Shown here: positions 1,176-35,291 of the stretch, one piece after another | Layout: the number at the start of each line of letters is the position of its first letter | Numbering within the stretch: the stretch's first letter is position 1 | Source of the DNA: Podarcis erhardii | Taxonomy: Eukaryota | Assembly (NCBI GenBank): GCA_964252035.1 | Contig: OZ176208.1 | Reading direction: 5' to 3' (one strand) | Length of the DNA stretch: 64,000 bases | Translations under genes and position numbers: made by a program | Notes under the pieces: generated by a model | Told to the model about the DNA's origin: nothing | Seen by the model: only the letters and a program-made list of their open reading frames with translations | Databases searched by the model: none

Positions 1176-1333
1176 GTGGATGGCAGGGACTGGGCTCTGA
1201 ATGGAAACACAATATCCCTTGATGATGAAACAGTCATAGATGTACCGGAACCCTACAACCATGCAGCCAAATACTGTGCCTCATTGGGGCACAAGGCAAA
1301 TCATTCTTTCACACCAAATAGTGTCTATGACTC
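1176..1333 (+). CDS. SETD7: SETD7 exon 7
   Basis: ttag|GTG, TC|gtaagt; VDGRDWALNGNTISLDDETVIDVPEPYNHAAKYCASLGHKANHSFTPNSVYD. Confidence 0.95.
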
Positions 1334-2462
1334 GTAAGTATTAAACTTGTGCTTTATGAAGGTGCTGCTTTTCAGGTGTCAGAACTGTATCTGCCAATGC
1401 GATAGCAGATGATATCAAAGGATCACTGCAACCACAGCACTATATCAAGTGGGTGGGAAAAACTGATGAAAAACACAGTTGAAAGCAAGGGAAGCATTCC
1501 TGGAAAATGGCACTTATTCATCATGCTCTGAGTCAGGGGTGGCTAGCCCTGACCACCCACTCCTGAAGATTTTTGGGGGCCCTCCTCCTCAAAAAACCTA
1601 CCTTTTTTTTTAATTAAATGGTTTTTAACCGGATTTAATGAATGAAGATAAATTATTTTAAATGGTGTAGAATTGCTGTTGGGAGACCCTTTTGGAAGGC
1701 AGACTCATTAACTGCGCCCAGTTGTGTGCTTTGTTCGTGCCCACGTTAACCTGTGACTCCCGAGAGTTGATAATAGGTGAATACAACCCTCTGTCCAGAA
1801 AAGGTTAGGCACCCCTTATCTAAGTGGAAAATCCTGCATGAGCCACAAACATTTTGCTTGGAGGTAGGTGGCAGGATCTTTCGTTGAAGAAGATGCTGAG
1901 GTGTATCTTCATAGTTTTGCCTCTGTGTTCAGCGGTGGCCCTACTATGAGTCAAGAGAGCTGTTTCCGCTGCCCTCTGTTCTTAGTCCCATCCACTCTCC
2001 TGTGTTATCCACAGTGGACGGACTGCTTAACTGTAACTTTTTCCAAAATTTTTGTTGTTGCTATTTAACAATATTTTGCTGCTGGCTAAATATCTCTATT
2101 TGGTGTTTTGTCGTTGAAATACACTGCAGACGTCTGATCTCCCTGGAGACCAAGAGATGTGACGATAGACTGCTCTGCCTCCTTTCTTTTAGCAAATGTT
2201 TTGTGCCACTGGGGAAGTGGCAATTCTCTATTGATTTGTTTTGGATGTTGTATGTGATGCCAATGAAGGTTTTACGATATGAATATTTTGCTGCAGAAAA
2301 AAAAAGTGGTCAGCGACACTCCTATAGTGTTCTCTGGTAGTGCTGCGTCACCTATATCTAAAAAACACACCGGATATATGTAAAGCTTTCAAGAAAATGA
2401 ATACATTGTTTGGGCTTGCTGAGATTCCTTTTTCTGACTGTGTATGCTTCCTTCCTTTCTAG

Positions 2463-2643
2463 GTTTGTTCATCCTCGTTTTGGGTTGATTAAATGTATCC
2501 GCACTATTAGGGCTGTTGAGAAGGATGAAGAATTAACAGTGGCTTATGGATACGACCACAATCCCATTGGACAAAATGGGCCGGAAGCTCCAGGCTGGTA
2601 TCAGGTGGAACTGAAAGCCTTCCAGGCTACTCAGAAGAAGTGA
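2463..2643 (+). CDS. SETD7: SETD7 terminal exon 8
   Basis: ctag|G acceptor; FVHPRFGLIKCIRTIRAVEKDEELTVAYGYDHNPIGQNGPEAPGWYQVELKAFQATQKK, TGA at 2641-2643. Confidence 0.96.
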
Positions 2644-7235: not shown

Positions 7236-8134
7236 CTTTACCTTTAAGTTAGCCTACAGAAGTAAAACTGAGAAAATATGCTAGAACTAGGTTTGGAAAA
7301 CCAAGTCCAAGGCAACTTACTGGGTTTCAATATAGAACACAATCATCATCTTCTTGCCTGCAGACTTTTCTCCTGCAAGTGATCAGAAATTGTGTATGTA
7401 ATATGTACAGGGAGCTACCTGCATGTTGAGGAAAGTCAGTTCAAAGTGAGTGGGCATAGAATTACCGGTAATCTAAATGTTGTGATGCTTCACATGAACG
7501 AAGTTAAACATGGTCATTTTTCTCACAGTCACTTGATAACTTATGTCCTTATGTGTGCTTGAGGGTAGCAGCTGCTATAGGGTTTTAAATTATTTTTCAC
7601 ATATTGATTGGGGGAAGAGAGCACTTGAGTGAACTCTACCCTTTGCTTTACAGACTGTGACTTGGTATCTCCTGTGATTCTACCAAGAAATTTCTATGCA
7701 CACCATCTACTGCATTCAGAAGATAGTTCCTACTGCTCCTAATGGAATAGTGTGTGTGTGTATTTTAGGATCTTAGAGTACAGAATATTTTGTTATACCC
7801 ATAAAAAGTCCTGTAGCAAGCACCAATAATCATTTTTTTAACGGCTGCTGTTGTCTGTTTCAAACATATTATTAATGTACAAGATGGAAACATCATCTTT
7901 GCTTCCCAATAACCATGGTTATCTTCTGCTTTTGTCTCCTGACACAGAGGTTTCTGAACTTAATCTAGTTTAGAAGCATTCTGAACTGGCGTGAACTAAC
8001 CAGGAACAAGAATTTGGGGTCAAAGCAGATAGCTCAGTAACAGTAGTGATCACCAAGCCACCTACATCCCCATCAAGCGCCCTCACCAGGGGTTTAAAAC
8101 TTGAATAAAATATTGGAAGGCCCACGTAAGCCCT

Positions 8135-8381
8135 GCCAGTGTGGTGTAGTGGTTAAGAGCGGTAGACTCGTAATCTGGGGAACCGGGTTCACATTTCCGC
8201 TCCTCCACATGCAGCTGCTGGGTGACCTTGGGCCAGTCACACTTCTCTGAAGTCTCTCAGCCTCACTCACCTCACAGTGTTTGTTGTGGGGGAGGAAGGG
8301 ACAGGAGAATGTTAGCCACTTTGAGACTCCTTCGGATAGTGATAAAGTGGGATATCAAATCCAAACTCCTCTTCTTCTTCT
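8135..8381 (+). mobile_element. tRNA/CORE (Ther1/MIR-related) SINE with (CTT)n tail
   Basis: tRNA-like head GCCAGTGTGGTGTAGTGGTTAAGAGC, core gtgaccttgggccagtcac, tail ctcctcttcttcttct; second copy at 18368-18563. Confidence 0.8.
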
Positions 8382-11300: not shown

Positions 11301-12839
11301 TATATCCTATGTCAGGATCCAAATGATGGCAGTTTGTGCTTCCTTACAAATAATGCTAATAATACATCTTATAATTTGGGTTATATTATAGCTCAGAATT
11401 TGAAAATGCTGATGTGCCATCTTGAGACATTTATTGGCAAAACTTGCAAAAATCATGGTGGAGTGGGGAAAATTCTTCAAAGAAGTCTGGAGCACAAATA
11501 TGCATTGAAGTAAAATGGTAAGCTGGAAGGAACAAATTGAAGGAACTTGGACACAAAAGAAAGTTAATGAGCAGCAGTCCATTTTGGCAAACTCTCATGA
11601 GAGTCAACACCACACTCGCCTAAAAAAATCCACAATAGTTCAGCTTAACAATTTTTTATCTAGACAAAAGGGTTTGCTTAGCTGCAAAGGAGCAAATTGG
11701 TGCTGAACTTAGCATGTTGGTCCTTCCAGTTTGTTGTGCCAAAGAACTTGCAGAATTTGAGGACTTCCACAAAGAGGAGTTATTTCAGCTACTTGGAATG
11801 TAGATTGCGTTGTACATGTTCAGGTAATAACTACTGTGGACAATGGTGTTCAGGTAGCAAGAATGCACAGCCTTCGCTTGTGGAGCAACTTGCATAGGTG
11901 ATGAAGGAGCAGGCAAATTCAGCAGCAAGAGTTCTTTAGCTGAGGGACATTAGTAGCAAATGGTTTAAACATTTTGCTATATGTACAGTGAATGCCAATG
12001 TAGCTGTCCTATAGCTGTAACACACTATTATTGAAGTCATCAGAAGGGATACGTGTGATGCTCTAAGAAGATCCCATGCACTTGTAAGATGTGATTGGTG
12101 TTACAGTTGTCAGTAGAAAGAAAATTCTTATGGAAAAAGTATGGACATTGATAAGGCATTCACATAACTTTAGTACCAACAAGGTTTCAGTTTGCAGTAC
12201 AGTTTGTTTTATAATCTGCAAGTCATTTTGTGGATGAGGCAGCACTATTTATCCAGACATTTACTCCCAAATTCTTCCATTTGGGAGGATGTTTTAATCG
12301 CTGCATGCTGACCTGCTAATGAGATGGTCTTATTTGGAGGCAAGGACATAGCTGCAGTCTGCGTCTTCTTTCTGCTAGTGAATAGGGGTAATATTTGACA
12401 CCTATTATCAGGGCTGAAGTCATAATTTTTAGAAATGAGACCCATGTCTCAAACTGTTGAACTGTGCTTGCCAGGGGGAAAAAAACGCACAATGAAAACC
12501 TATTGCAAGCAATCCAGACTGAAATATGAAAACCGCAAAGGAAATGACTGAATTTGATACTGTTTTCTCTCTTGGTAAACACAAGCCCAACACCTGGTGA
12601 GCATTTCAGAATGTAGAATTCTTGAACTCTTCAATGTATATATTAAAAGAGCACCTGCCGTATTTCTGTACAGTATGTCGTAACTAGAATTGAACTTTTA
12701 AGTGCTTCAGTGCCTTTGCTTGCCTAGTTCTGTTACAGCAGGGGTAGGAAAGTTCATGCCAACAGGCCAGGTTTGTCCTGTAAGGCCATTTTCAAAAACC
12801 ACACCCACCTGCCAACCAGTTATAGCTTTAAATGATTTA

Positions 12840-13273
12840 GGGTGCAATCCTGCCCCGCTAGTCAGCAATGACAGGGCTTGATGCAGCAGTGCAACCAATG
12901 CCGCCTTTAACAGCACTTGAACTGACTGAGACAAAAGTTATGGTGGGGAGGGAGGAAAGAGAAAAATGCCCTTTTGCTCCCATGTTGTTGCGCTGAAGAT
13001 ACCTGGACTGGGCCTGTCACCATCATATGAAGGCAGCAGGGTCCACACCAGAGCCAGCAGATGCTATGCTGGCCCAGCCTTTCCAGAGACATCCCATTTG
13101 GGGGAGTTCTGTCTATTGTCAGCAGCAATAACACTTCAGGTAGTTACTGCCTGCCAACCACTTGGGCAGGCACACCAGAGCACTCCTTACTGTCTATGGC
13201 AAATGTCCCCCACTGGTAGAGGCTGGTGGGGCAGGGCTAGGTGCAAGGACAGATTGGGGGTTTGGATTACTCT
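12840..13273. mobile_element. possible decayed PIF/Harbinger-type MITE
   Basis: tta|GGGTGCAATCC start and a degenerate GGATTACTCT end; no clean second TSD. Confidence 0.3.
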
Positions 13274-15206
13274 GTCCTCTGTCAATCTTTAAATTTCCAT
13301 TTTAGTAAACTGAAGCCAACAGTAACTTAGGTTGTTCTTGCACATAATGTTAAGCCATTGTCTATTTTAACCATGGTTGGTTCAACAGATTCGGCTGTGT
13401 CTTGCTGATGAGAAGTTGGCTGCTGGTGCTGACCTTGCCTTGTGCTTTTGTGGCAAGGCAAGTGTGTGGGGTGATGTGCCAAAACAAACCATAATTAAAC
13501 CAGGATAGTGGGTTTTGATGTCATGTAAAATCAGTCAGCACAAGATGAGATTTGCTAAACCATGATTTCATATTCAGGTTTATTGACTGGGGTGTGTTTA
13601 GAGGTACAAAGTACAATTAAGCTAAACAAATTACAGCTTAGTGGTGCATATAAACTCTGCTAGTGTGTAGCTTGTTTATATTGAAATAGTACACATTACA
13701 GTATAATATGTAGATCCACTTCTGTTTATTGTTGTGCATTTAACGTTTCCATACTAATATATTGACCTCAGCTACAGAAATTCCCATATATGATATATAG
13801 TTATTTATATACAGAAATGAGAGAGCTGCCATTTTGGCATAGCTGTCATATTGAAATATGCATTTTCCAAGATGGATCCACACCTGCAATAGAACATTAA
13901 TTTCTACAGTCCTGCAAAAGAGGACTGCCTTCTCACAGTTTTCAATTAGGATCTGTTTTGCTTTATGAAATGTGTTTCAAAAATTATTCTCTCTATATTC
14001 CTGTATGATGTGTGAAATTTTTGTATTGTATTATAACTAAATGTTGTTTTCAAAATAGCTGCTACTCACTTTAAGCTTCTTGCAAAAAGAAACGCTCCTG
14101 GTTTATTTGAAACTATGGATCCAGATGTTTCTGTGTGGCCTGGTGTGGTAGCTCTTTACTCCTCAGATGAGACCACATTTTGTGGTGTGGTAAGAGACCT
14201 GCATACAATTGACAGGCAATTCCGTACTATTTTAACATGTATGCCGTACTGAGTACTTGATGACATAAAATAAGTTACTAGAACGATGAGCCTTATTGAC
14301 ATCCATAGATTTTACAAATAACTTCTAAAACTATGGATAACTGTAAAGAAAAGTTTACATGAATGAAAGTTGCACTTTCTGTGTTATGAATGAGGTTTTT
14401 TATGAATATGATGAATGCATGTACAAGGAAGTAGGGATAATGTTTCTGGTGCAAAAAATGTACTTGCTTTAAACTGCGTTATGAAAATAAAGCATTACAT
14501 GAATGAAGCTATTTGCCTCTGAACCATTTTTTCTCCTTTAAAAGTAGTCTTTAATATTTAAATACTGAACTAGCATCCTTATTCAATGCACCAGAACAAA
14601 CATTGCCATTGATGTGAAATCACTTAGTTGCAAATAAGGCAGATTTGGTATGGTTCAAGCAGCTGCTCCTTTTTGACTCATGGATTTTGGAGATCTTCTT
14701 AATGGGCCAGCATGGTTGCTTTTTGCCCTTTTGGGGGGTTTTCGCAGGGTTTTTTTCCTGTGTTTGGCCATAAAGGCAGAAGTACACAATTGTGTTGTTT
14801 TGCCTCTCTAGCAGGGCCTCTAATTGGCCCATTTTATCTTGACTTTCTGGTGGCCAGAGCATTCCTTAATAGCCAGCCACAAGTGGGCTTCTGCTGCTGG
14901 GGATGGTGGGTGGGGCAAAGGTCTGCAACCGCCACCCACCTGAGAAGGGTGAGTGGCCATTATAATCTCTCTCCTTCCCTCCCCCCAGCCCACCCTTTCA
15001 TTTAAATCCATGCAAAATAGCACTTGGTTATTTCTGGTTGATTTTGAACAGACAAATTGACTGAGACAGAAACAGTTAAGCAAACCTCTCTCCTGGTTTA
15101 TCTTGACCCATAAGGCATGCGCATGAGTAACGTAACTGTTTACTGAAGAAATCTCTCAGGTAACAGAGATAAACAGTCTCTTCTCTCTTTACCAGTTATA
15201 CTTATA

Positions 15207-15582
15207 TGGACCATCCAGTATATCTGAAGGAGCATCTCCACCCCCATCATTCTCCCCGGACACTGAGGTCCAGTGCAGAGGGCCTTCTGGTGGTTCCCTC
15301 ACTGCGAGAAGTCAAATTACTGGGAACCAGGCAGAGGGCCTTCACGGTAGTGGCGCCCACCCTGTGGAACACCCTCCCACTAGATGTCAAAGAGAACAAC
15401 AACTACTAGACTTTTAGAAGACATATGAAGGCAGCCCTGTTTAGGGAAGCTTTTAATGTTTGATGCATTACAGTATTTTAATATTTTGTTGGAAGCTGCC
15501 CAGAGTGGCTGGGGAAACCCAGCCAGATGGGTGGGGTATTAATAAATTGTTGTTGTTGTTGTTGTTATTGTTATTATTATTT
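15207..15582 (+). mobile_element. L2 LINE 3' end
   Basis: ORF2 C-terminal peptide RAFTVVAPTLWNTLPLDVK..*TFRRHMKAALFREAF, then 3' UTR and (TTG/TTA)n tail; same family as 38822-39233. Confidence 0.85.
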
Positions 15583-15742
15583 ATCCATCCCATTTCACTT
15601 TCATTTATCTTCAGTAGTTAGAGATGAGGCTGAAATATGAAGCAAAAGGGTGTGGCTATGGTAACCTAGGTCTATATAAACTGACACAAAATTGTAAGAA
15701 TATAAGAATTTACTATCCAGCAGGGTAAGCCCTGCTTAACAC

Positions 15743-15743
<1 letters not shown>

Positions 15744-15804
<61 letters not shown>

Positions 15805-15812
15805 CACACACA
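15744..15812. repeat. (CA)n microsatellite, about 34 units, one interruption
   Basis: Directly visible. Confidence 0.97.
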
Positions 15813-16689
15813 GCGGTTAAAAGCCATCTTTGGGGAACTTCCCAAGTGCCCTCCATCAACCTAGGTTGTTTGAGGAGCCAGTACTTCCACAGGGCGGCAC
15901 ATGAGGAGTTAAAGCATGCAGCGGGGAGGCAACAAGGAAGGTTGTCACCTGCAGAGGGTTGGGCTGGTTGAGACAACAGAGGGGTGGGGCAGGCTGCCGT
16001 GAGAGCTGCATGGGGCTTTCAAGGCAGAGCCAGCCCCTGGGTGACTCATCCCCACCCCAGCGCACCTGTCTAGGGGTCTCTCATAAAGAGGAAGAGGTAA
16101 AGCTGGCTGAGGTAAGTAAGTGCCTTTCTCTTCTACTCTGGGATTGCGTATGTTTTGCTTTCCTTCCTCTGTGGTTGCCCTGAGGTGCAAACTGCTCAAG
16201 TCTCCTCTTTCTCCAACTTCCTCTTCATTGCCCGAGGGAGGGAGCGAGCGAGCGAGCTGAGGTTAGGCAGCCAGGTACTTTCCAAAGAGAGCAAACGAGT
16301 TGAATTCCGCTTTGATAAATTGCCCTTCCTGTGCACCTGAAATTGAAGTGCTTCTTCCCTGTTCTCATCTACTTCTCCTGCATGAAGTGTTTAAAGTCCA
16401 CTGACTTTCCCCCTCCTTTTGCAATCACACACAGAACTTTCTTAGATTATTCCACTTCCCACGTTCCATAACAAATAACTCTGCAGCTGTAGACTCTAAA
16501 ATATCTAAACACTTAAAAAAAAAAACCAAAAAAAACCCCAGAAGGATTGTTCACAAACTTAGCTTTTGGTGGTGGTGGTGGGGACTTTCTGTAAGAGAGA
16601 TCAGCAATAACAGTGTCTCCTATTATGCAACACACAATTCATCCTTTGAGTGTGGAGCTGCCCTTTCTCGTGGCAAGTTTCACATCCCA

Positions 16690-18563: not shown

Positions 18564-19155
18564 TCTCAGTCACAAGACACAGTCTTGTGTCTGCAGATTC
18601 TCTCATTTTTGAAAGCTCTAATGTATTTTCCTGCTGATATCTATTGCATATAATGGAAGTGTGAAGATAAGGAAGAAATCTGTATTATTTGGAATTTTGT
18701 TTGCTTGTGTCTTTTGTTATTTGGAAACAGGGTACAAATGAACTATTTGAGTTTTGCATCAGTATATTTTAAACCTGAAAGTTCCATGTTTTCTATATTG
18801 ATATCAAATATAGGGATCTCCTAAAAATATAAAGATGTCTTTGTTTTTTAAAAAATGCCATTCCGGCCCATTTAAGTTTTTGTTTATGTTTTCTAATTAC
18901 ATATTTACTGGATAAAGATGTCCAGCTCTCTCCATATGCAGAGAATCCAAAGCTTAATGTGTCTGGATATTGGAAGATTGTCCATACTATTAATGGAATG
19001 GCATGTGAACAATTTGTCAGATGATGCTTGTTGAAGTGCTTATGAGTTTTCTTGCATCTTCTGTTCAGGAAAACCCACAAGGACAGCCTTCTCTTGAACA
19101 ACCTCGGTGCTTCTTCCCAATTTGAACAGACGTGGCAATTGGTGGATTAGCTGAA

Positions 19156-19320
19156 ATGGATCGCTACAGATATTTCATCTTCAATCAGAAAAGTATGGTT
19201 CTGTTGGGGCTCCTCCAGATAGCTTGTGCTACAGTTTGTATCATCGGTGGATTAATTGATGGTGCTTTCAGAAGGGACTCAGCACTGAGCAAATCTAGGA
19301 TACCCATCTGGGCTGGAGTG
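19156..19320 (+). CDS. CD20/MS4A-like gene, coding exon 1
   Basis: Acceptor at 19068|19069; ATG at 19156; MDRYRYFIFNQKSMVLLGLLQIACATVCIIGGLIDGAFRRDSALSKSRIPIWAGV; GTG|gtaagc. Confidence 0.85.
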
Positions 19321-19726
19321 GTAAGCTATATAAACTCTACCCCCCTACACACCCTTTTTATTAACAATGTATAAAGTTATAAAATCAAATTTCAATTGAA
19401 ATGCTTGCTGCAATAAAAAAAGTATTCAGTAGATTTCGGAAGTACAGCAGGGAGGGTTGTACAATTTAGTATGATAAAGGGAATTTGTTCACTGTTCTAG
19501 GGAATTTGTGGTTCTATATTCCACAAGCCAGAATCTCTCTCCCCCCCCCCACTGGACAGTGTGGTGGGGCTTTGCCCAGCCGCTGGGAGACCCCTGTTGC
19601 TGAGAATATGCCCTTAAAGAGTCCCTCCCCCATTGCAGGGGTGACAGCAGAGCATTTGGTCTCAGGTGCTGAAACACCTTGGGCTGTCCCTGAGTGCTGG
19701 CCTAGTTTTGTGGTAAGAGCCTAGAG

Positions 19727-19862
19727 CAGGCTTCCTCAACCTCGGCCCTCCAGATGTTTTGAGACTACAATTCCCATCATCCCCGACCACTGGTCCTGCT
19801 AGCTAAGGATCATGGGAGTTGTAGGCCAAAAACATCTGGAGGGCTGAGGTTGAGGAAGCCTG
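19727..19862. mobile_element. hAT-type MITE
   Basis: TIR CAGGCTTCCTCAACCTC / GAGGTTGAGGAAGCCTG; perfect 8-bp TSD GCCTAGAG at 19719-19726 and 19863-19870. Confidence 0.92.
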
Positions 19863-20204
19863 GCCTAGAGGGCAAGTGTGATTGCAGCTGCCTTTGATAT
19901 CTGACTTGCATCTCCTCAATTTGGAAGTGGGGGAGCTGAGGATCAGGCTCACAGAAGGAATGCTCTGGACTGGTCTGGGTGAGAGAAGAATGAGGACTCT
20001 TCTTTCTCCTGGGAAACATCGGAGAATTTAATGTTTTTTGGAGATAAAATAACTGGAAGGGGGAATTGATTTATGGTGTTTGCACTTCATATGGCTTGTG
20101 GTCTTAGGCTGGTTGCTTATCTCCGTCTTCTCCAGTGCTCCATTTCCAGCTGTGGCCAGTCAAATGCCAATGGGAAGTTTTTTCTGTTTATATATTTAAA
20201 CTAT

Positions 20205-20400
20205 TTCCCACCTGTTCTTCAATGCCAAGGCAAACCCTAAGCAGGTTACATTAAAACCAATAGAAATCCAAATCAACAATGTAGTAGATGCCTCCAAAAG
20301 CCTGGGCAAATAAGTGATTCTTCACCTGGGGCTGAAAACTCAAATTGTGAGTTAGAAGAAATTCCATAATTGTGGGGCTGATAACAAGAAGGCCCTGTCT
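20205..20400 (-). mobile_element. decayed L2 3' fragment
   Basis: Resembles the reverse L2 tail pattern (aaagcctggg.aaa.aag, ttcca.a.ttgtggggc..aagaaggccct). Confidence 0.45.
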
Positions 20401-21484
20401 TACATTTTTGCCTGCAGGAACTTATGAGGGGGACATGTTTGTTTTCCACATTTGATATTCAGAAATATTTTGCTTTCAACATGGAGATTTCATTTAGCTA
20501 GTGAAGTTGAAAGGAGGGGGCACCCATAGGTGAAGCTGGTGTTTTGAGTGGGTGGGGCTAATTGGGAGAGTGGATGATACTTGTAGGACCTCTACTTTAC
20601 CTAAGGAGGGGAGAACAGGACTGAGAAAAGTGAATGATTTCCGGGAGAAAATTGCATTGCAGAAGCTGAACTGTTCAGATTCTACTAGCTGATTGTAGTA
20701 ATTACAAACACTATTTTAGGGTGGTACATGGGAGCTGTGGTGGTGATGCTACAAGCAAGAAGAAGCTGGGATTGTTAGTAGTGACTTCAAATAATTTAGT
20801 GGCAGCATTTTACTATGGTACAATCACTTTGCTGTAATAATTTTTTTACTTTTTCTTTTCTTGGGTCCCAAGCTAATGTTAGAAATGCAATGGGTGAAAG
20901 TATGATTTACACTTTGAAAGGTGCACATCTAATATGCCTCCTTGGTGTGTTTCACATACCCAACTCCTTGCCCTTGTAGCATGGCGGGCTAGTGATCTGA
21001 TAGCTGTCGATTACTTTACTATCCTCATGTGTCAATCACATTTTCACCTATATAAGAAAAAGCATCTGGTGAAATTGACCAAGAATCTTCAGCCCACGTT
21101 TAACAGCCAGTTGAACAATTACGTTCCCTCTCTAGTGTCAAAATGACCTTCTCTGAAATCGTGCCTAAAGGAAAGATGTTTACTTACTATGGAATAAACC
21201 ACGTTCAGCCTTTGTGCTTCATAGATCTGCTGGTTGTTGATCGGGAGCTGGTGTCTTAGAAACCACTTGCCAACCAGTGTATTTATATTTATACACTGCT
21301 TAACTACAATCATATTTAAGTGGTTTACGAGGATGTAACAAAAAAGTAAAAATCAGTTAAAACTATAAAATAAAACCTGTAGTTTGTTTTCATCTTCCTG
21401 AAGTTAATGTTTTTTCACTTCTTTTTATATGCTAAAGTTGGGCATTGCCCCCCAACTTAATCCCCTTTACCTTTTGTTTTGTAG

Positions 21485-21544
21485 TTTATGGCTATTCCTG
21501 GAATTATGGCTTTGTTTTCTTCAATGAGAAAGAATCCTGTTTTG
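21485..21544 (+). CDS. CD20/MS4A-like gene, coding exon 2
   Basis: ttttgtag|TTT, TTG|gtatgt; FMAIPGIMALFSSMRKNPVL completes TM2. Confidence 0.8.
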
Positions 21545-21639
21545 GTATGTTTCTATTGTATTTTGTTTAAAGTGGATGGGGACAAATCATACAGCCGACT
21601 TTCTATAAGTAATAAATACACACACCTTTTATTTACATA

Positions 21640-22080
21640 ACTTTTACTTCATGTCTGAGGGGCAGATGGGGCTCATCAATATGGGAAGGTAGCCCATCTA
21701 GGAGAAGGAAAACTCTGATCCTAAATGTCTGCTGCTTTGCAGGGTATATTTGGGAAAAGAAAAGGCTAAAGAGTAAACCCTACAAAAATCTGGAGTGGAG
21801 TCCCTAAGATGGTTGGATGGCACCTTGTATGCCTCCTTCTAGCAACTCCTGCAGCCAAGTTGGTGCCAAACATATTGCTCTACTTTCATTTGGGACCACA
21901 TCAACAAGGCTGAGATGGAGGTTCTTATCATATGGGTAGCCCAGGACCCCCATACACACTGCCCAGGCTTGCACCCCTGGGAGGTCACTTTGGTGCTGCA
22001 CAGTGGTTTGACTTCACCCCCGAAGGCACACTCCATTGTCCCTCGAGACAGATGGAGGCCAACAAAAAGCAACAACAAAC
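21640..22080 (+). mobile_element. probable RTE-related non-autonomous retroelement
   Basis: ggagaaggaaaactctgatcctaaa motif near the start; ends gagacagatggaggccaac plus (CAA)-like tail; family recalled, not verified. Confidence 0.4.
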
Positions 22081-23332
22081 TTTAATCTCTGCCCTGAAGT
22101 GTTTGGAGATATACATCATAGGCTACAATTAAAGTGATCATACATGTATGATTTTGGGGTTTAGAGTTTAAAAATCACAACAGATTAAAGGTCTCAAGGA
22201 GGACCACTTCAACAGCAGTTCAAAATTTCTTCAGTCTGTCTCTAAATTCATCAATCATTCTCTCTGTGTTGCTCCAAATGGCTGGATTGTAGTAACACAT
22301 TACAGTTGAAAGGTAAGAATATACATGTTTTAGAAAACACAGCACAAATTTTATCTATACATATGTAAAATTATTATTTATGTTAAAGGGGAGGGAATAA
22401 AATTCCTAACCACCTTTTCCACCTTTGGCCTTCAACCCCCTTTACATAGCAAGCACAATGGTAGTTTTTGGGCATGTTTTTAAACACCCATAATTGGAGT
22501 TCCCAGACATGGATGTTTAAAAGATCCATGCACATCATCCATACTTTGAGCATTAACTGACCTTGGGTGATGGTTGTAATGGATGAAGTAGAAATGGGTC
22601 TTAGTTAAGCCTAAAACCTGCTGGGAAAACACAGCAGCTGACCTGCTGTAACTGGTCACCATCACCTTCTCAAATCTAGACTGGATGGTAATGTCAAATT
22701 GTGTGATTTTGTGTGATTCCTGGAGGGGTCCTTTGCTCACTCAGAAGTGGAACAGACCAGACCAGCAGCTGGGTCAGCCAATCTCTTTCTAATGAATGCA
22801 GCACAACATTCCCCACTTAACTTATTTTGATCCACTATGCTGCTTTCCTAGAAAATCTGAATGGTTTCTACCTATTTGGTTTCTTGGCTGCCTTGGTAAC
22901 ATCCCTTCTGTTGATTGCCCAAATCCACAGATATCTTTGCTCAGTACTTTTTGTTCTTTCTGGCAGCTTTATTGCTTCTAAGAAAGTCCCATACATTTAA
23001 ACTGATCTTGCTTCCAAGAAAGGCATGTGTGAGAATAGGCTTAAAACATCAAACACCTGCACACACTCCCTAAAAACACAAGATGAAATATAAATATAAG
23101 TATGTTGATTTCCATTTACAGTAATTAGGAAAGGAAAGGTTTGATTTTCACTGATTCATACCCACATTTCGGAAATTGTATTGTGAATGCATGTTCCCTC
23201 AAAGACACTGGAAAATAAATTACTGTAGTGTACAAAGATTGCATAAGAGGCATATGTGGAATTATTTTTCATCCTTTGACTTGAAGCCCAAATTTAACTC
23301 TGGTCTTCTCTATCCCCATACCTTTTGTACAG

Positions 23333-23470
23333 GTGAATGCAATGATAATTGCTTCTGTATTTTCCTGCTTTGTCACTCTACTTGTAATCATCTATACATC
23401 TATAACATTAGAGTATGGTGAAAAATATGAAGAGTTTGACAATGTGTCCTCTTATCATCACCCAGCCGTT
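23333..23470 (+). CDS. CD20/MS4A-like gene, coding exon 3
   Basis: acag|GTG, GTT|gtaagt; VNAMIIASVFSCFVTLLVIIYTSITLEYGEKYEEFDNVSSYHHPAV. Confidence 0.85.
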
Positions 23471-24044
23471 GTAAGTATCAAACTATCCAGTTTCTGCCCT
23501 TTTGAATACATTGCACACAGTTTAGGAGCGACAGAGTAACTAGCACACCCAAAGGTCTGTCACTCACATCAGTTAGGGCAGAAGATGGTGCAGGAAAATC
23601 TATGTGTGTTTCTTTACTGAACAAGGTCCAGGCTGGCACAGCAGAGGCAAAATCATTGGATGGCTCAACTCTGCTCCCTTCTTGGTCCTGAAATGCCTTT
23701 TATGGCAGGTATTGTTGGGAGTTCCATAGTAAAGGATGCCTCCTACTGGCACAGGCACCGGGGGCAGATCAGGGTTTGGTGTGCCTTATATATATTACTT
23801 TCATTTTATCCACCCAATTTGAGGATATTAATTGACACCATCAGTTTGTATATATGTATAAATCATAGATGTGGTTCCTCAACTATTTATCAATTACTAT
23901 TTATTTTTGTTTTTCACTTGTCATTCCTTTTCATGTAAAATAATTAAAATATAAAAAAGAGAGTTTCCAGGTGTTTTAAAAACAATACCCACACCACTTC
24001 CAAGGTTGGATAAAGGGTGTGTGTGCTCATTTTCTGTGTTGCAG

Positions 24045-24191
24045 GCATTTGTGCTTGGTAAACTTGTAGAAGGAGCCAACATCACACTACTGATTGCATC
24101 GCTTTTCAGTGCTTTTATTGTGCTGATTATTGCTTATCTGAGTTGCCGAAGTCTTCCATGTTGTTCATGCTATGACAGTGTCACTGGACTT
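24045..24191 (+). CDS. CD20/MS4A-like gene, coding exon 4
   Basis: gcag|GCA, CTT|gtaagt; AFVLGKLVEGANITLLIASLFSAFIVLIIAYLSCRSLPCCSCYDSVTGL. Confidence 0.87.
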
Positions 24192-25124
24192 GTAAGTAGC
24201 AACATTGCCATTAAAAATGGTGGGTTTACTTGTCTTGTACTGGGAAGGAAAGCCTTTGGGGATTCTGTAAAAACATTTTTGGACAGTTTGATATGACGTT
24301 GCCGTATTTCCTTAACCCCCTTCAACTAGTTAAGCCCAAAATGCACACAAAACTAATTTTTTGAATTGTCATTTGGAAAAAAATGATTTGTGGACACCTC
24401 ATATTATAGCACTGTATACACTAAACAACTATGAACCTCATCAGTGCTTGATGGTAAATAACTGCCATCCTTATATAAGCTTCTGTGCACTTCCTAAGGA
24501 GTGGGGTATAAATTGTATATAACTGCCCCTTCTGCATGTTTTTCTTGACAGGTGTGTGCATGAAATGTTTTTTACTAGGTTCACAGTTCTATGGGTGGTA
24601 TTCAGCTAAGTTTAATTCAGAGTAGATCCTTTGAAATTAATGAACTTGACTAAATAAGTTCCATTAATTTCAGTCAGTGTACCCTGAGTGAATGCCACCC
24701 CTTGTGTTTAAGATTTGCCAATTATGTAGCATTTACCACTTCTAAGGATGACCTCTCATTGTTTGATAAGTGCCATATTTATGCATCTCTTAGATATGTT
24801 TGTTCAGCTTGTTATCAGGTTTATTAAATGTAAATGGTTTGAAATAAATATCTTAATTATGATGATGGTAGCTGCAAAAAAATTAAGAAATACTTTTGTA
24901 AAGGAAAATACGGTAAACTGTCTTGGGCATTATACGATGAATAGCTTCTTTTTCTTGAACTGCAGAACTTTTTATTTTTAGTCTTGTTCATTATTATACC
25001 ATTGCAATTACTTTTGGTAACCAAATTACAAAATGAAACCGTGTTTGTCTCGAAGACTGCACATTCTAAGATCAGTGCTATTCTCAGGTGAACCTATTTA
25101 GCAATCTCATGCTTTCATTCTTAG

Positions 25125-25185
25125 GAACAGCTAGAATCTAATGAAGACCAGCTACAAATTGCGGAATTAGTTTGCATTCCATCTG
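25125..25185 (+). CDS. CD20/MS4A-like gene, coding exon 5
   Basis: ttag|GAA, CTG|gtatgt (phase 1); EQLESNEDQLQIAELVCIPS. Confidence 0.7.
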
Positions 25186-25574
25186 GTATGTAGGTGTTCT
25201 CACTGTTTTACTTGAAAATTAATTTCGGATTTACTAAATATGTAAGTCAAATAATGAATATGTAAGGAAGACATTTGGGCTATATAAATATTATTTAAAA
25301 TCATCGTAATAATTAAAAGCCATTTCCATAAAAGCAATCTAACTACAATTACAAAAACTAGGCAGTAGTGGTTAAAAATAAAATCCAGCACATTACTTTA
25401 CTGCTGGTTTTAGTTTAATTTGTTCTTATTAATTTTTAACTGTAAAACCCAACATAGCTCTTTTAATCAATAGTGGGGTAGAACAGAAAAAATTAAAAGA
25501 TAATAAAGCCCTGGTAATAATCCTTGGGAGGAAGACAGAAAAATATGTCTCATTGGTGCCCACAATAATAGATA

Positions 25575-25900
25575 CTGATGGTGGACCAAGGCCAGGCCTC
25601 TCAAGCCAATGTTCCGTCCTGGGCAGATTTCTGAGAGTGTAGGCTGTCCTTCAAATAAAGCCCTACATTGTCTAGGGCTAGGTTAAGTGTCAAAACCAGT
25701 CCTTTAAATGGGGCCCAGAAACGAATTGGCAGATAATGCAATTGGTAAAATATGGGTATTAGGTGTTCCCAATGCCTGATCCCTGCAAGAATCTGGGCAG
25801 CTACCTTCTGCACCAGTGGAAGTTTCTAAACCATTTTCAAAGGCAGCCCCATGTACAACCAGTGTATTACAATAGTCTAGTCTGCATGTAACTAGCACAT
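25575..25900 (-). mobile_element. L2 ORF2 C-terminal remnant
   Basis: Frameshifted peptides LVTCRLDYCN and QKVAAQILAG..HLIPIFYQLHYLPIRF..FKGLVLT typical of L2 reverse transcriptase C-terminus. Confidence 0.75.
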
Positions 25901-25964
25901 GTAATTAAGGCAAAGTTTGCTTTCTGCAGCTACATATGCTCACTGTGTGTGTTTTCTATTCTAG

Positions 25965-26068
25965 GTCAAGTGGATACAATTTTTAATTCTCCTGTAAAAC
26001 TTTCAGATTTAGATATGGAAGCTGATGATGATATGCCCAAACCACCTCCGTATATCAGGATGACTTAA
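25965..26068 (+). CDS. CD20/MS4A-like gene, terminal coding exon 6
   Basis: ctag|GT completes the phase-1 Gly; QVDTIFNSPVKLSDLDMEADDDMPKPPPYIRMT, TAA at 26066-26068. Confidence 0.75.
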
Positions 26069-26223
26069 ATATAAATTCTAGGAGAATAAGTTTTTTTAAA
26101 AGCTCTTTATAACTTAAGAACGTTACTGAGACGTTTGTACAATTCTTAAAAGTTAAGAAATGACTGACCACTCTGAAGAGATCCTCAGAATTTCAAGACT
26201 GGTGACCTATTTTCTGTACAGTT

Positions 26224-26229
26224 AATAAA
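26224..26229 (+). terminator. candidate polyadenylation signal of the CD20/MS4A-like gene
   Basis: First AATAAA after the stop codon. Confidence 0.5.
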
Positions 26230-26865
26230 CTTAATTCTATTTTCATAAATTTTAATTTAGCCCCGTGGTGTTTATTTGACTCCTGCTGTGTAATAGAATC
26301 TTCAATAATAGCAAGCATCCTTTGAACCAGAAAAATTGTCATGGGCAAATGAGTCTTCCAAATGCAAATTTGCTTGTTCAAATGAGAATGGTGTGCAGAA
26401 ATCATAAGATTCCGTGTGATAACTGGTTTCACTGCTAGCACAGAAAGCAAAGAGTGGGCAGCTAAATACTGTGAATATTAGCCAATGCACTCTACTCCAA
26501 TGATTTCACCAATGCCCCCTGTTAGAATTTATGGATTGTGTTTTGTATGGAATTAGTATTTCATTAAAGAGGCATCAGCTTTCATATCATATGCTCCATC
26601 TGGCCTAAACTAAAGAAATCAATTTGAACATATCCCATCTTGCCCATTGGTTCTCTTCCACAGATTCATTTTTTAAAGACAAATACACATATAACTCCAG
26701 AAATAAAACACTTTTTAAATAGCCATAGGTGTGGCTGCCTGAGGCAAGCAAGAATCTTTCAGGACATGGAAGCTTCACAACACTCATAACAATGTGAATG
26801 TTTCTAAATGACAGGCAATTACAGTGGGGGAAAATGAGACAAAAGCAGAATTTTACTTGCTAGCA

Positions 26866-30560: not shown

Positions 30561-31001
30561 CTAACACCAACATGGCATGGCGGGTTTTACTGCAGGTTCT
30601 AAGTGAATTGTGTTATCGGGTAGCTGACTAAGCATGAGTGGCTTGTGACTCTTGAGCTTATGGGCCAGGGTCATAAATATGGCTTCCACATGATCATTGT
30701 CATTAGGGTTTTTAGCAGATGTTTCAAACAGTGGCATGCTATGAGTGTCAGCAAATTTCTGAGCCATGTCCGTAGGGACCTGAATTGCACTTCTCAGATC
30801 ACATTTATTTCCAACCAAAATCCGGGGTATATCATTGGTGAGCAAGTGTTGTTTGCATTCCTCGATCCACAGTGGCAAACTATGGAAACTGGCAATATTT
30901 GTCATATCATATACAAAAACGACTGCATGTACATTCCTGTAATAGTGCTGTACCATGCTCTTCCTGAATCGCTCCTGCCCTGCCGTATCCCAGAGCTGAA
31001 T
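30561..31001 (-). CDS. RAB33B: RAB33B exon 2
   Basis: ctag|ATT; [35 protein letters not shown]. Confidence 0.96.
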
Positions 31002-32003
31002 CTAGATGTACCGAGAAGGGGAGAGAAACAAGAAAAACAAAATGATTTCACTCATGCTGGTGGAAAGACATAATTTCAACTTTAACTCAACAGTATTTTT
31101 ATATTGCTATGATTTCTGTTCATGAGGGTCTTTAAGGTCAGTGGTTTTATATCTCAGCAACAGCAACAAAACATAAATGAAAACTTTTGCTGTGAAGTTT
31201 CCTGCAAACACCTTTTTATACACCAGCTTTTCAAAAACAGTTATACTAAATATTAGTAATTGTGTGTCTTTTACTGTAGATGAAGGTATTGCAGGAATTA
31301 AGAGCTTGCCAAGAAATTCACATTGTGAGATGAGAATTAAGTTTAATTAGGATCTATGTGATTTAAAAATCAGCATGCTTACATTTCAATTGAAAAGAAG
31401 AGGTGTCATTGCTTAACATACTGTACATGTATAAGGATGACACAACTTTCCATTTAAGCACTAGCTGGTAACCAGGAATTCCATGCAGCTGGTTGCATGG
31501 AAGCTCTACCTCTCTGCACCCAGCATAGAAACCACATGTTGCTAGAGGTGGGATGAAGAATTCTGCAAGGCCCTAGCAAACTAGCATTATGTGTTTGCAA
31601 ACTTTTGTGAGCTTATTTAAACACTGGGATAAAGAGATGCAATAGGCCACAGGTTTGACTAAATATGAGCACATCTTCAAAACTGTGTGATGTTAATACA
31701 TGTTCAGCACTCAGCACATGAACAACAGTTAGTTAGACCAAGGGGCTCAGAGGTGCAACTAACAGAATGTTTACAGGTGCAACTATAGGGCTCAGCGATG
31801 AAGCTCACGGGGGGGGGGGGGCCTTCCTCAAGTTACCGTACTCAGATTGTTGCAAACACAAATCTTGATTCAGGGGAAGCAGCTGAGATACAAGTATAAC
31901 AATATTTTTGGCCGTGTGTCAGCTCCACACAGCATGGATGAGCAACAGGACTAGAGTTGTCCACTCCTGTCCTGCCAGGTGGCATGGTGTAAAAGAGGTC
32001 CTA

Positions 32004-32060
32004 GATCATAGAGTCGGAAAGGACCACGAGGGTCATCTAGTCCAACCCGTGGCAATGCAG
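32004..32060 (-). mobile_element. CR1-type 3' tail fragment
   Basis: Reverse reads ctgcattgccacgggttggactagatgaccctcgtggtcctttccgactctatga; same tail as 52140-52203 and 56100-56160. Confidence 0.7.
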
Positions 32061-32180
32061 ACATCTTTCACCACCTGCACCTATAACAGTATTGCAGCAG
32101 AGGAAATCTCAGCAGACGTCGCTTGCCGAGGCAAAGCACCTGCCTTTTCTGCACACACCTGTTAAAGGAGCAGCAGCAGC

Positions 32181-32990
32181 CCCGGACTCCCTGCCCCTTT
32201 GCATCTACTACGCGCCAGCTGCAAGGCAGCCGGCAGAACAGCCCCGGAGCCTGGCAGGGGAAAAGCAGCCCGAGGAGGCGACCTCGGCTTTCCGCACCTT
32301 GATGCGCTCCCCGTCGATGTCGACGGCGCGTTCTCGGAAATCCACCCCGATGGTGGCCTCGGTGCGCTCCGGGAAGCGGCCCGCGCAAAAGCGGAAAGTG
32401 AGGCACGTTTTGCCCACGTTCGAGTCCCCGATGACGATGATCTTGAAGATGCGGGAGCGCGCGGGGGGCAACGTCCCCGGCCCCGCGTAGCTGCTCGACA
32501 GGCTCAGCTCCAGCGACGACTCCACCTCGCCCGCCGCCGCCGCCGCCATCGCCGCCGGGCCCAAGAAGGCGCCTTCCGCTGCGCCGAGTCACTCGCGGCT
32601 TAGTCGCTCAGGCCCAACCTGGCGGAGGGATTCGCGTCGCGGCGGGGAGGCGAAAAAGGCCCGCGCGCCCCCGTCGCTCGCTCGCGCGTGCCCATTTCCC
32701 CCCTCCCTGACAAGCCGCTTCGCTTCCGCACCTGAGGGCGGCGGCTGCCGCTTCACGCGTGTTAAGCCACGTAGGAGGAACAGCTCCGCCCCTTTCGCGG
32801 CATAGGCCGGGCCTGATAGGCGAAGAAAGGCGAGGCCGTGGAAAGGGGCGTTTCCGGTCGCCTCAGCAGGGGGGGAAACAGGGACGACGGGAACACGAAA
32901 GCTCGCGAGAAGTGGGATGTTATGGACGCGGCTTTAAATGGCGGGTTGGGGGCGGCAGCGGCCATCTGGCTGTCATTGTTGGCCAGCGCT
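32181..32990 (-). promoter_or_regulatory. CpG island / RAB33B promoter
   Basis: Abrupt GC- and CpG-rich island over exon 1 and upstream in an otherwise CpG-poor window; GC box ctccgccc near 32784. Confidence 0.85.
32298..32549 (-). CDS. RAB33B: RAB33B exon 1
   Basis: ATG at 32549-32547 (gcgATGG); [39 protein letters not shown]; AAG|gtgcgg. Confidence 0.95.
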
Positions 32991-35151: not shown

Positions 35152-35291
35152 NNNNNNNNNNNNNNNNNNNNNNNNNNNNNNNNNNNNNNNNNNNNNNNNN
35201 NNNNNNNNNNNNNNNNNNNNNNNNNNNNNNNNNNNNNNNNNNNNNNNNNNNNNNNNNNNNNNNNNNNNNNNNNNNNNNNNNNNNNNNNNNN
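35152..35291. other. assembly gap (140 N)
   Basis: Run of n. Confidence 0.99.

What the first reader, a model, noticed from the sequence alone, without database searches (positions are those of the whole stretch)
19156..26068. Unnamed four-TM CD20/MS4A/sarcospan-like gene between SETD7 and RAB33B
Seen: six short exons, only fragmentarily caught by the ORF track, splice at GT-AG sites into a stop-free 224-aa protein. It has four hydrophobic helices (MVLLGLLQIACATVCIIGGLI; IPIWAGVFMAIPGIMALFSS; VLVNAMIIASVFSCFVTLLVIIYTSITL; ANITLLIASLFSAFIVLIIAYLSC), an N-glycosylation sequon (NVS) in the TM3-TM4 loop, a juxtamembrane CRSLPCCSC cluster and an acidic tail. Known: LGxxQI in TM1 and PxWxG in TM2 are hallmarks of the CD20/MS4A clan (MS4A, sarcospan, TMEM212, FAM189/ENTREP). 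Inference: I recall no protein-coding gene between RAB33B and SETD7 in human, so this may be an uncharacterised family member lost in mammals.
Basis: partly seen in the sequence, partly recalled or inferred. Interest (0 to 1): 0.82.

Follow-up and report, generated by a model that had tools for sequence, protein, structure and literature searches.

The report
Conserved uncharacterised CD20-like membrane gene
This is a real, spliced and expressed lizard gene for a small four-helix membrane protein of the CD20 family. It is the counterpart of the unstudied zebrafish gene zgc:113425, is conserved from sharks to birds beside SETD7 and RAB33B, was found in no mammal, and ends in a motif that probably recruits ubiquitin ligases or the endocytic machinery.

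Summary
Six GT..AG exons (19156-26068, + strand) join into a stop-free 224-aa protein. Spliced RNA contigs from four public runs of close relatives show introns 1-4 exactly, and they leave the genome at the donor of intron 5. The protein is 98.7% identical end to end to a 224-aa RefSeq protein of Podarcis raffonei.

It passes Pfam CD20 (79 bits against a cut-off of 27.9). Its predicted four-helix core matches the solved FcεRI-β, CD20 and sarcospan structures at 12-22% identity.

The gene is not unannotated. It is the orthologue of zebrafish zgc:113425, listed as "uncharacterized protein" in more than 200 jawed vertebrates. Its six-exon structure is conserved, and the SETD7 > gene > < RAB33B order holds from a teleost to lizards. 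Squamate dN/dS is 0.08-0.38.

No mammal appears among the hits shown, and a published mouse gene table lists Rab33b and Setd7 as neighbours. No searchable paper mentions the gene.

New here: the C-terminus is an extended PY motif, (L/P)PxYxxΦ. The YxxΦ part is present in 124 of 125 sequences. This suggests a NEDD4-ligase or AP-2 trafficking adaptor like ENTREP or NDFIP, which is inferred and not tested.

Verdict: an uncharacterised member of a known family, of moderate interest.

The parts
18934..19155 (+). Probable 5' UTR; the start is approximate and assumes the RNA contig is colinear with the genome upstream of 19200
   Evidence: In contig X10 record 9 (1055 nt), record positions 267-386 lie on 19200-19319. 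In X5 record 18, about 209 nt precede the ATG. An in-frame TAG lies just upstream of the ATG.
18985..19045 (+). Sequence block upstream of the ATG conserved among lizards (5' UTR or promoter element)
   Evidence: MAFFT alignment of the upstream 450 nt from the window and loci L001-L005.
19156..19320 (+). Exon 1 coding part: invariant N-terminus MDRYRYFIFNQ, TM1, first loop and start of TM2 (PIWAG)
   Evidence: Pfam CD20 26.7 bits for this exon alone; RNA joint 19320>21485.
21485..21544 (+). Exon 2 (20 codons): the rest of TM2 and the short cytosolic loop
   Evidence: RNA joints on both sides in four runs.
23333..23470 (+). Exon 3: TM3 and the first half of the second outer loop (TLxYGE)
   Evidence: Pfam CD20 15.6 bits, colinear with exon 1; RNA joints.
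24045..24191 (+). Exon 4: TM4 and the juxtamembrane CRSLPxCxCYD cysteine cluster
   Evidence: RNA joints; S157, P159, C161 and C163 invariant in 44 sequences.
25125..25185 (+). Exon 5 (61 nt): acidic tail with the E-[LM]-V-C motif
   Evidence: RNA joint 24191>25125, and the contigs leave the genome at the donor.
25965..26068 (+). Exon 6 coding part: the FNSP motif, an acidic run, the C-terminal KPPPYIRMT and the TAA stop
   Evidence: colinear with P0175; motif statistics.
26069..26245 (+). 3' UTR with AATAAA at 26224-26229; the end is approximate
   Evidence: The length of contig X10 record 9 implies about 158 nt after the stop codon.
1180..2643 (+). Last two coding exons of SETD7, the upstream neighbour; coordinates approximate
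   Evidence: The frame translations contain the SET-domain C-terminal peptides, and the ORF ends in QATQKK followed by a stop.
30561..32564 (-). RAB33B, the downstream neighbour, convergent with the gene; two coding exons
   Evidence: ORFs 30561-30956 and 32208-32564. A Ras-family gene sits in the same position in loci L001-L005 and L007.

Best explanation
This is the lizard orthologue of the uncharacterised vertebrate gene zgc:113425. It is a single-copy, six-exon gene lying between SETD7 and RAB33B, and it encodes a 224-aa four-pass membrane protein with the CD20/MS4A fold.

Shown here: the gene is spliced and transcribed in close relatives, it is under purifying selection, and it is conserved with its exon structure from chimaera to lizards.

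Inferred from the topology of solved relatives: both ends of the protein face the cytosol. The 69-residue tail is acidic and disordered. It begins with a three-cysteine cluster (CRSLPxCxCYD), probably a palmitoylation site. It ends in an extended PY motif, (L/P)PxYxxΦ, one residue from the C-terminus.

The mechanism I consider most likely is that the protein acts as a small membrane adaptor. Its PY motif would dock the WW domains of NEDD4-family HECT ubiquitin ligases, and the overlapping YxxΦ would engage AP-2-type clathrin adaptors. The protein, and whatever partner its helices hold, would then be ubiquitinated and sorted into endosomes. This resembles the CD20-homology protein ENTREP/FAM189A2 acting with ITCH, and NDFIP1/2.

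The gene seems to have been lost in the mammalian lineage.
For: Gene model and splicing.

Orthology: 98.7% identity to P. raffonei LOC128421083, and 52% identity between a lizard orthologue (Hemicordylus, P0119) and the white-shark zgc:113425 protein. More than 200 clusters are annotated zgc:113425 or LOC, and all carry PF04103.

Family and fold: Pfam CD20 scores 79.2 bits against a cut-off of 27.9, covering profile positions 2-156 of 156. The AF2 helices have pLDDT 80-94. Foldseek finds MS4A proteins at E 4e-6, FcεRI-β 8y81_B at 7e-5, CD20 6y90_A, sarcospan 9c3c_n and ENTREP3.

Conservation: the six exons are conserved in nine species. The SETD7 > gene > < Ras order is seen in Danionella, SETD7 lies upstream in the eagle, and a Ras gene lies downstream in five squamates. 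Squamate dN/dS is 0.08-0.38.

Motifs: YxxΦ at the C-terminus in 124 of 125 sequences and (L/P)PxYxxΦ in 94 of 125. KPPPYIR[LMF] occurs in at least two cartilaginous-fish sequences, coelacanth, basal ray-fins, turtles, crocodile, birds and squamates; most amphibians have the same core after R or Q (RPPPY[IV]R[LF]). LPPYSRL is the usual teleost form. Y220, C161, C163 and the N-terminal R3, Y4 and Y6 are invariant.

Precedent: the PPxY motifs of ENTREP bind the WW domains of ITCH and drive endocytosis (PMC8811627).

Mammals: none among the hits shown. Rab33b and Setd7 are adjacent in a mouse gene table.
Against: No binding, localisation or acylation data exist for any member, so the mechanism rests on short linear motifs. 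Such motifs also occur by chance, although conservation at a fixed position argues against chance here.

Many sharks and rays have PAPY, PVPY, SAPY or TAAY in place of a canonical PPxY or LPxY. The most deeply conserved feature is therefore YxxΦ, and WW binding may not be universal or ancestral.

There is a single PY motif and a 69-aa tail. ENTREP has two or more motifs and a tail of about 340 aa.

Cytosolic topology is inferred from relatives, not tested.

Only the best 120 of 202 and of 224 hits could be seen, and no mammalian genome could be searched, so mammalian loss is not proven.

The RNA evidence comes from close relatives, not from the window's own species.
Confidence: 0.55

Rival explanations
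1. The protein is a non-catalytic auxiliary subunit of a membrane receptor or complex, in the way FcεRI-β (MS4A2) serves the IgE receptor, CD20 associates with the B-cell receptor, or sarcospan sits in the dystrophin-glycoprotein complex. Its helices would hold and stabilise a partner. The C-terminal YxxΦ would be only its own sorting signal, with no ligase recruitment.
For: The best sequence and fold matches are FcεRI-β, followed by CD20 and sarcospan. The strongest conservation lies in the helices, the first outer loop (D35, F38, R39, R48, P50, W52) and the N-terminal stub, which suits a packing interface. YxxΦ is more deeply conserved than PPxY.
Against: Identity to those proteins is only 12-22%. 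No partner is known. There is no ITAM as in FcεRI-β, and no large disulphide-bonded outer loop as in CD20. A canonical PPPY or LPPY persists in nearly all bony vertebrates, which YxxΦ alone does not explain. The two readings do not exclude each other.
Confidence: 0.3
2. The protein forms or regulates an ion-conducting or ligand-sensing oligomer, as has been proposed for some MS4A proteins (my own recollection, not a tool result).
For: It has the CD20/MS4A fold. Polar residues inside the helices are conserved (Q21, S86, Y96, T100, N133).
Against: Nothing specific in the data points to this. Solved CD20 structures show no pore (my own recollection, not a tool result). The outer loops are short and variable.
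Confidence: 0.07
3. This is not a working gene: either a chance chain of ORFs, an annotation artefact, or a decaying pseudogene in this lizard.
For: None beyond the short exons. The RNA runs are from relatives, not from the same animal.
Against: The exact GT..AG junctions are seen in RNA. The frame is intact in six squamates with dN/dS of 0.08-0.38. The six-exon structure and synteny are conserved across jawed vertebrates. Pfam scores 79 bits.
Confidence: 0.01

Closest known systems
zgc:113425 orthologous group (zebrafish placeholder symbol; 'uncharacterized protein LOC...' in RefSeq for sharks, ray-finned fishes, coelacanth, amphibians, turtles, crocodiles, birds, tuatara and squamates)
   Same: Same length (about 222-227 aa), the same six exons, the same neighbours, the same invariant motifs, and 52-99% identity.
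   Different: Nothing material; the window's gene is a member. The group has no described function and no paper in the searchable library.
MS4A family, including FcεRI-β (MS4A2) and CD20 (MS4A1)
   Same: The four-helix CD20 fold, a match to Pfam PF04103, the LGxxQ motif in TM1 and PxWxG at the start of TM2. These are the best matches by fold and by PDB sequence.
   Different: Identity is 14-22% (Swiss-Prot models). The chromosomal neighbourhood differs: SETD7-RAB33B here, where the MS4A genes lie in a cluster on human 11q12 (the latter from my own knowledge). The second outer loop is short and has no cysteines. The N-terminus is a 13-residue invariant stub. There is no ITAM, and the tail carries a C-terminal PY motif.
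ENTREP/FAM189 family (ENTREP1-3)
   Same: A CD20-homology membrane domain joined to a cytosolic tail carrying PPxY. The PPxY motifs of ENTREP1 bind the WW domains of ITCH and drive endocytosis (PMC8811627). Foldseek matches ENTREP3 at E 5.6e-4.
   Different: ENTREP proteins are 450-670 aa, with tails of about 340 aa and two or three PPxY motifs. This protein has a 69-aa tail and one motif at its very end. Identity is about 15%. Which family is the nearest paralogue could not be settled here.
Sarcospan
   Same: A small four-pass CD20-fold protein of about 240 aa. It is matched in the solved dystrophin-glycoprotein complex (9c3c_n, 8yt8_S).
   Different: Identity is 12-14%. Sarcospan's large cysteine-rich second loop is absent here, and sarcospan has no C-terminal PY motif (the last point from my own knowledge, not a tool result).
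NDFIP1/NDFIP2
   Same: Small multi-pass membrane proteins whose PPxY motifs recruit and activate NEDD4-family ligases (as summarised in PMC8811627). This is the proposed way of working.
   Different: They have an unrelated three-helix fold, sit in the Golgi and endosomes, and carry their motifs in the N-terminal part. They are a functional analogy only.

Membership tests
CD20-like family (Pfam PF04103) | Match to the family HMM above the curated cut-off, over the full length of the domain | tested here: met
   P0175, which is 98.7% identical to the window's protein, scores 79.2 bits against a cut-off of 27.9 and covers profile positions 2-156 of 156. Taken alone, the window's exons 1 and 3 score 26.7 and 15.6 bits and are colinear.
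CD20-like family (Pfam PF04103) | Four transmembrane helices packed as in solved CD20, FcεRI-β and sarcospan | tested here: met
   There are four hydropathy peaks. AF2 predicts helices 11-38, 49-69, 73-111 and 119-157 with pLDDT 80-94. Foldseek target-normalised TM-scores are 0.58-0.71 to 8y81_B, 8k7t_B, 6y90_A and 9c3c_n.
CD20-like family (Pfam PF04103) | Both the N- and C-terminus in the cytosol | not testable with these tools
   Inferred from the homologous solved structures only.
zgc:113425 orthologous group | High end-to-end similarity to annotated members, with no closer family | tested here: met
   98.7% identity to P. raffonei and 56-83% to other tetrapods. The lizard orthologue P0119 is 52% identical to the shark protein. 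All listed hits belong to this one group.
zgc:113425 orthologous group | Conserved exon structure and conserved neighbours (SETD7 upstream on the same strand, RAB33B downstream and convergent) | tested here: met
   Six exons break at the same residues in nine species. The neighbours are shown. In Callorhinchus neither neighbour lies within 10 kb.
MS4A subfamily proper | Close sequence relationship to the MS4A genes and a place in the MS4A gene cluster | tested here: not met
   Identity is at most 22%. The only PDB sequence hit is FcεRI-β at E 7e-4. The gene lies between SETD7 and RAB33B.
ENTREP/FAM189 | A CD20-homology domain followed by a cytosolic tail of more than 300 aa with two or more PPxY motifs | tested here: not met
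   The tail is 69 aa with a single PPPY. The ENTREP layout is taken from PMC8811627. A deeper relationship was not resolved because no ENTREP sequences could be fetched for a profile comparison.
PY-motif adaptors of NEDD4-family ligases (a functional class) | A (L/P)PxY motif in a cytosolic, accessible segment | tested here: met
   PPPY lies at residues 217-220 in a disordered tail with pLDDT below 50. (L/P)PxYxxΦ is present in 94 of 125 orthologues.
PY-motif adaptors of NEDD4-family ligases (a functional class) | Physical binding to WW domains, and ligase activation or substrate delivery | not testable with these tools
   This needs pull-down, two-hybrid and ubiquitination assays.

The most novel reading that the evidence does not exclude
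zgc:113425 proteins are an ancient, previously unrecognised class of minimal four-pass adaptors. Through a C-terminal PPPYxxΦ they would bring NEDD4-family ubiquitin ligases and clathrin adaptors to a specific membrane client. Mammals would have discarded this regulator while keeping its neighbours SETD7 and RAB33B.
Probability: 0.3. Interest if true: 0.55.

Novelty: new member of a known kind. Interest (0 to 1): 0.38.

Why it matters
This gene has been kept for about 450 million years in almost every jawed-vertebrate lineage, with invariant motifs at both ends, yet it has no name, no paper and apparently no mammalian copy. It is therefore a gap in vertebrate cell biology that model-organism work centred on mammals would never fill.

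The C-terminal PY/YxxΦ motif gives a concrete hypothesis that is cheap to test, and zebrafish, Xenopus and chicken all carry the gene. If the hypothesis holds, the protein joins the short list of membrane adaptors for NEDD4-family ligases. It would also be a clean example of a trafficking regulator lost in mammals.

For genome annotation it supports giving the family a proper name in place of LOC numbers. Carried-over names also need correcting: one frog entry is labelled SETD7 and one monitor-lizard entry is labelled as a chloroplast ribosomal protein.

Tried and rejected
- **First exon 2 end:** my first model ended exon 2 at 21545, which broke the frame. The correct end is 21544.
- **Literature:** searches for the symbol found nothing. 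The single hit for '113425' was a PubMed number in a reference list. A search for papers treating the CD20-like clan as a whole found only gene lists.
- **Profile against PDB sequences:** only FcεRI-β passed, at E 7e-4. CD20 and sarcospan were not found by sequence, only by fold.
- **Nearest paralogue:** I could not settle whether ENTREP, MS4A, TMEM196, sarcospan or TMEM212 is closest. No tool let me fetch those sequences for a profile-profile comparison, and the protein searches list only the best 120 hits, all of them orthologues. Foldseek ranks MS4A first, but at 12-22% identity the order means little.
- **Protein atlas:** it returned the protein's own cluster and other CD20-domain clusters. 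Its structure matches used another protein's model and were uninformative.
- **Unnamed hits from the exon-1 search:** they are Logan or JGI fragments without names, so they say nothing about mammals.
- **Xenopus locus:** the look-up found no record.
- **N-glycosylation:** NVS as a family feature is rejected. The N133 sequon (N-I-T) is present in 68 of 125 sequences, but it sits at the membrane edge, so I make no claim about it.
- **Pseudogene or chance ORF chain:** rejected.

Full report
**1. The observation**

The exons are 19156-19320, 21485-21544, 23333-23470, 24045-24191, 25125-25185 and 25965-26068 on the + strand. Each is preceded by a pyrimidine-rich tract ending in AG and followed by GTAAG or GTATG. 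Together they give 675 nt, which is 224 codons plus TAA. My first attempt ended exon 2 one base too late and broke the frame.

Exons 1 to 4 all begin and end between codons. Exon 5 ends one base into a codon.

A 19-residue hydropathy scan shows four hydrophobic segments, at about residues 14-34, 49-69, 74-101 and 131-155. The window also holds the last two coding exons of SETD7 on the + strand, with the stop near 2643. It holds both coding exons of RAB33B on the - strand at 30561-30956 and 32208-32564, and a piece of NAA15 further on.

**2. Transcription and splicing**

One search found RNA runs that hold 5-23% of the sampled words of the gene region. I laid four of them, from four studies under three organism labels, on 19200-25199. 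This respects the 6,000-letter limit.

All four runs contain a spliced contig with GT..AG joints at 19320>21485, 21544>23333, 23470>24045 and 24191>25125. The tool reports the first two joints one place to the left and notes that the cut one place further right, which is the GT..AG reading, fits as well. Word depths were 21 to 157.

After the fourth joint the contigs fit the genome for 63 letters and then stop, although the stretch continued to 25199. Exon 5 is 61 nt long, and both intron 5 and exon 6 begin with GT. This is what a contig running on into exon 6 would show.

The contig lengths (1055, 974 and 749 nt) fit an mRNA of about 1.05 kb. It would have a 5' UTR of roughly 210-220 nt and a 3' UTR ending near the AATAAA at 26224.

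The runs differ from the window at two synonymous third-codon positions, 19257 and 19281. Podarcis raffonei differs at the same two positions. The RNA therefore comes from close relatives, and the window's own animal has not been sampled.

**3. What the gene is**

Exon 1 alone, searched against 1.84 billion representative proteins, found 41 relatives. Their source names are "uncharacterized protein zgc:113425" in sharks and teleosts and "uncharacterized protein LOC..." in birds.

Two word-indexed searches followed, one with a full-length shark member and one with a full-length lizard member. They found 202 and 224 clusters, and every listed cluster carries PF04103. The taxa were chimaera, sharks, rays, coelacanth, bichir, sturgeon, gar, bowfin, many teleosts, caecilians, salamanders, frogs, turtles, crocodile, tuatara, birds, lizards and snakes.

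The best match to my model is P0175, LOC128421083 of Podarcis raffonei. It is 224 aa and 98.7% identical with no gap, so the window comes from a lacertid. This also supports the acceptor of intron 5.

Mapping eight of these proteins back onto their genomic loci shows the same six exons broken at the same residues. This holds in Callorhinchus, Danionella, Aquila and five squamates.

The neighbourhood is also conserved. A Ras-family gene of 226-228 aa lies convergent downstream in all five squamate loci. A SET7_N/SET-domain gene lies upstream on the same strand in the eagle. In the small genome of Danionella all three genes sit within 12 kb in the lizard order. In Callorhinchus neither neighbour lies within 10 kb.

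Among six squamates the frame is intact. Pairwise NG86 dN/dS is 0.08-0.38, lower in the membrane core (0.17-0.32) than in the tail (0.26-0.55).

**4. Family and fold**

Full-length members pass Pfam CD20 well above the cut-off. The scores are 79.2 bits for P0175 and 66-100 bits for shark, frog and eagle members, against a cut-off of 27.9. The match covers the whole profile.

A 44-sequence alignment (A1) gave an AlphaFold2 model with four long helices at pLDDT 80-94 and a disordered tail from residue 161. Foldseek places the model with several groups:
- MS4A proteins and FcεRI-β (E 4e-6 to 1e-4);
- the solved FcεRI-β chains 8y81_B and 8k7t_B;
- CD20 (6y90_A);
- sarcospan in the dystrophin-glycoprotein complex (9c3c_n, 8yt8_S);
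- TMEM196 and ENTREP3.

All of these matches are at 12-22% identity. By sequence profile, only FcεRI-β is found in the PDB, at E 7e-4.

The protein is therefore a clear member of the CD20-like superfamily. It belongs to none of the named subfamilies, and I could not determine its nearest paralogue.

**5. Conserved features and likely mechanism**

The alignment shows unusually strong conservation at both cytosolic ends.
- **N-terminus:** the 12-residue M-[DA]-RYRYFIFNQ, with R3, Y4 and Y6 invariant.
- **Just after TM4:** C-R-S-L-P-x-C-x-C-Y-D-x-x-T-G, with S157, P159, C161, C163 and G169 invariant. There are three cysteines in 95 of 125 sequences.
- **Tail:** acidic, with a median net charge of -7. 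It carries the E-[LM]-V-C and [IL]-[FL]-N-[SD]-P motifs.
- **C-terminus:** K-P-P-P-Y-I-R-[LMF]-x followed by the end of the protein.

YxxΦ at the end of the protein occurs in 124 of 125 full-length sequences, and (L/P)PxYxxΦ in 94 of 125. By clade:
- KPPPYIR[LMF] is found in at least two cartilaginous-fish sequences, coelacanth, basal ray-fins, turtles, crocodile, birds and squamates. Most amphibians carry the same PPPY core after R or Q (RPPPY[IV]R[LF]).
- Teleosts mostly carry LPPYSRL.
- Many sharks and rays have PAPY, PVPY, SAPY or TAAY.

(L/P)PxY is the ligand of the WW domains of NEDD4-family ligases. In the CD20-homology protein ENTREP/FAM189A2, PPxY motifs mediate binding to ITCH and endocytosis (PMC8811627). 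YxxΦ is the classical tyrosine-based sorting signal read by the μ subunits of clathrin adaptors, and a PPxYxxL form is the extended PY motif of the epithelial sodium channel. Both of these last statements come from established knowledge, not from a tool.

My best reading is a palmitoylated four-pass adaptor that couples a membrane client to NEDD4-type ubiquitination and clathrin-dependent sorting. This is an inference from motifs. I put it at roughly 0.4-0.5 for the WW-binding part and higher for a trafficking role of the tyrosine.

The main rival is an auxiliary-subunit role, as for FcεRI-β, CD20 or sarcospan, with the tyrosine motif serving only the protein's own sorting.

**6. Mammals**

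No mammal is among the 120 best hits shown for either search, although these lists extend to teleosts and sharks at E about 1e-65. An orthologue of ordinary divergence would have been listed.

A published table of the mouse chromosome 3 interval lists Naa15, Rab33b (51,483,966-51,496,228) and Setd7 (from 51,515,318) consecutively, with nothing between the last two (PMC5063463).

This fits loss of the gene in the mammalian lineage with the neighbours retained. However, 82 and 104 weaker hits could not be seen, monotremes and marsupials were not checked individually, and no mammalian genome could be searched. I did not send anything to human sequence.

**7. Novelty and verdict**

The gene is not a discovery in the sense of being unannotated: automatic pipelines predict it in more than 200 species, and zebrafish has a placeholder symbol for it. 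It is uncharacterised, since no paper in the searchable library mentions it.

I class it as a new (unstudied) member of a known kind and rate its interest as moderate.
- proof of splicing;
- the phylogenetic range and the conserved microsynteny;
- evidence for purifying selection;
- recognition of the conserved C-terminal PY/YxxΦ motif, the cysteine cluster and the invariant N-terminal stub as handles for experiments.

It is D in P. raffonei, and a sequon occurs in that loop in only 3 of 125 sequences.

Noticed in passing
window 19720-19870 (intron 1): A palindromic repeat of about 150 nt with inverted ends, resembling a miniature transposon. RNA contigs pile up here to summed word depths of about 7,600-140,000 in the bin 19600-19799 across the four runs, with many loose ends and back-joints. 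It is therefore a very abundant, transcribed repeat family in these lizards. A second repeat at about 21600-22100 reaches depths in the hundreds to low thousands.
   Followed up: no
window 18985-19045: A block about 110-170 nt upstream of the ATG, containing TTAATGGAATGGCATGTGAACA, is nearly identical in the lacertids, Rhineura, Hemicordylus and Anolis. The surrounding sequence has diverged, and the python has lost the block. It probably lies in the 5' UTR or the core promoter. ORF callers on short assemblies read through it, producing false N-terminal extensions (P0002-P0004).
   Followed up: partly
related proteins P0172, P0193, P0201, P0168 (203 aa); P0204, P0207, P0221, P0011 (178 aa); P0007, P0032: RefSeq lists recurrent in-frame isoforms in lizards, snakes, turtles, birds, fishes and a shark. 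They are about 20 aa or about 45 aa shorter than the full protein. The size fits skipping of exon 2 (most of TM2) or exon 3 (TM3), and exons 1-4 all start and end between codons. P0007 and P0032 visibly lack the exon 2 segment. No such joint was among those listed for the lacertid RNA contigs.
   Followed up: partly
Rfam found nothing in the window at gathering threshold. At E<=1 over 6800-7450 it found only sub-threshold microRNA-hairpin models, as any long hairpin would give, and no hammerhead family. A minimal hammerhead might escape these models.
   Followed up: partly
related proteins P0071, P0179, P0174: Some members carry misleading names from their sources. A Leptobrachium entry is named 'SET domain containing 7', taken from its neighbour. 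A Varanus komodoensis entry is named '50S ribosomal protein L23, chloroplastic'. A Phrynosoma entry is named 'Membrane-spanning 4-domains s...'.
   Followed up: no
window 35152-35291: A run of 140 N (an assembly gap or masked stretch) lies beyond RAB33B.
   Followed up: no
locus L007 (Danionella cerebrum), 4165-16365: In this miniature fish the whole SETD7 / zgc:113425 / RAB33B-like trio fits in about 12 kb, and the CD20-like gene spans only 2.4 kb. This would be a convenient compact locus for reporter or knock-out work.
   Followed up: no
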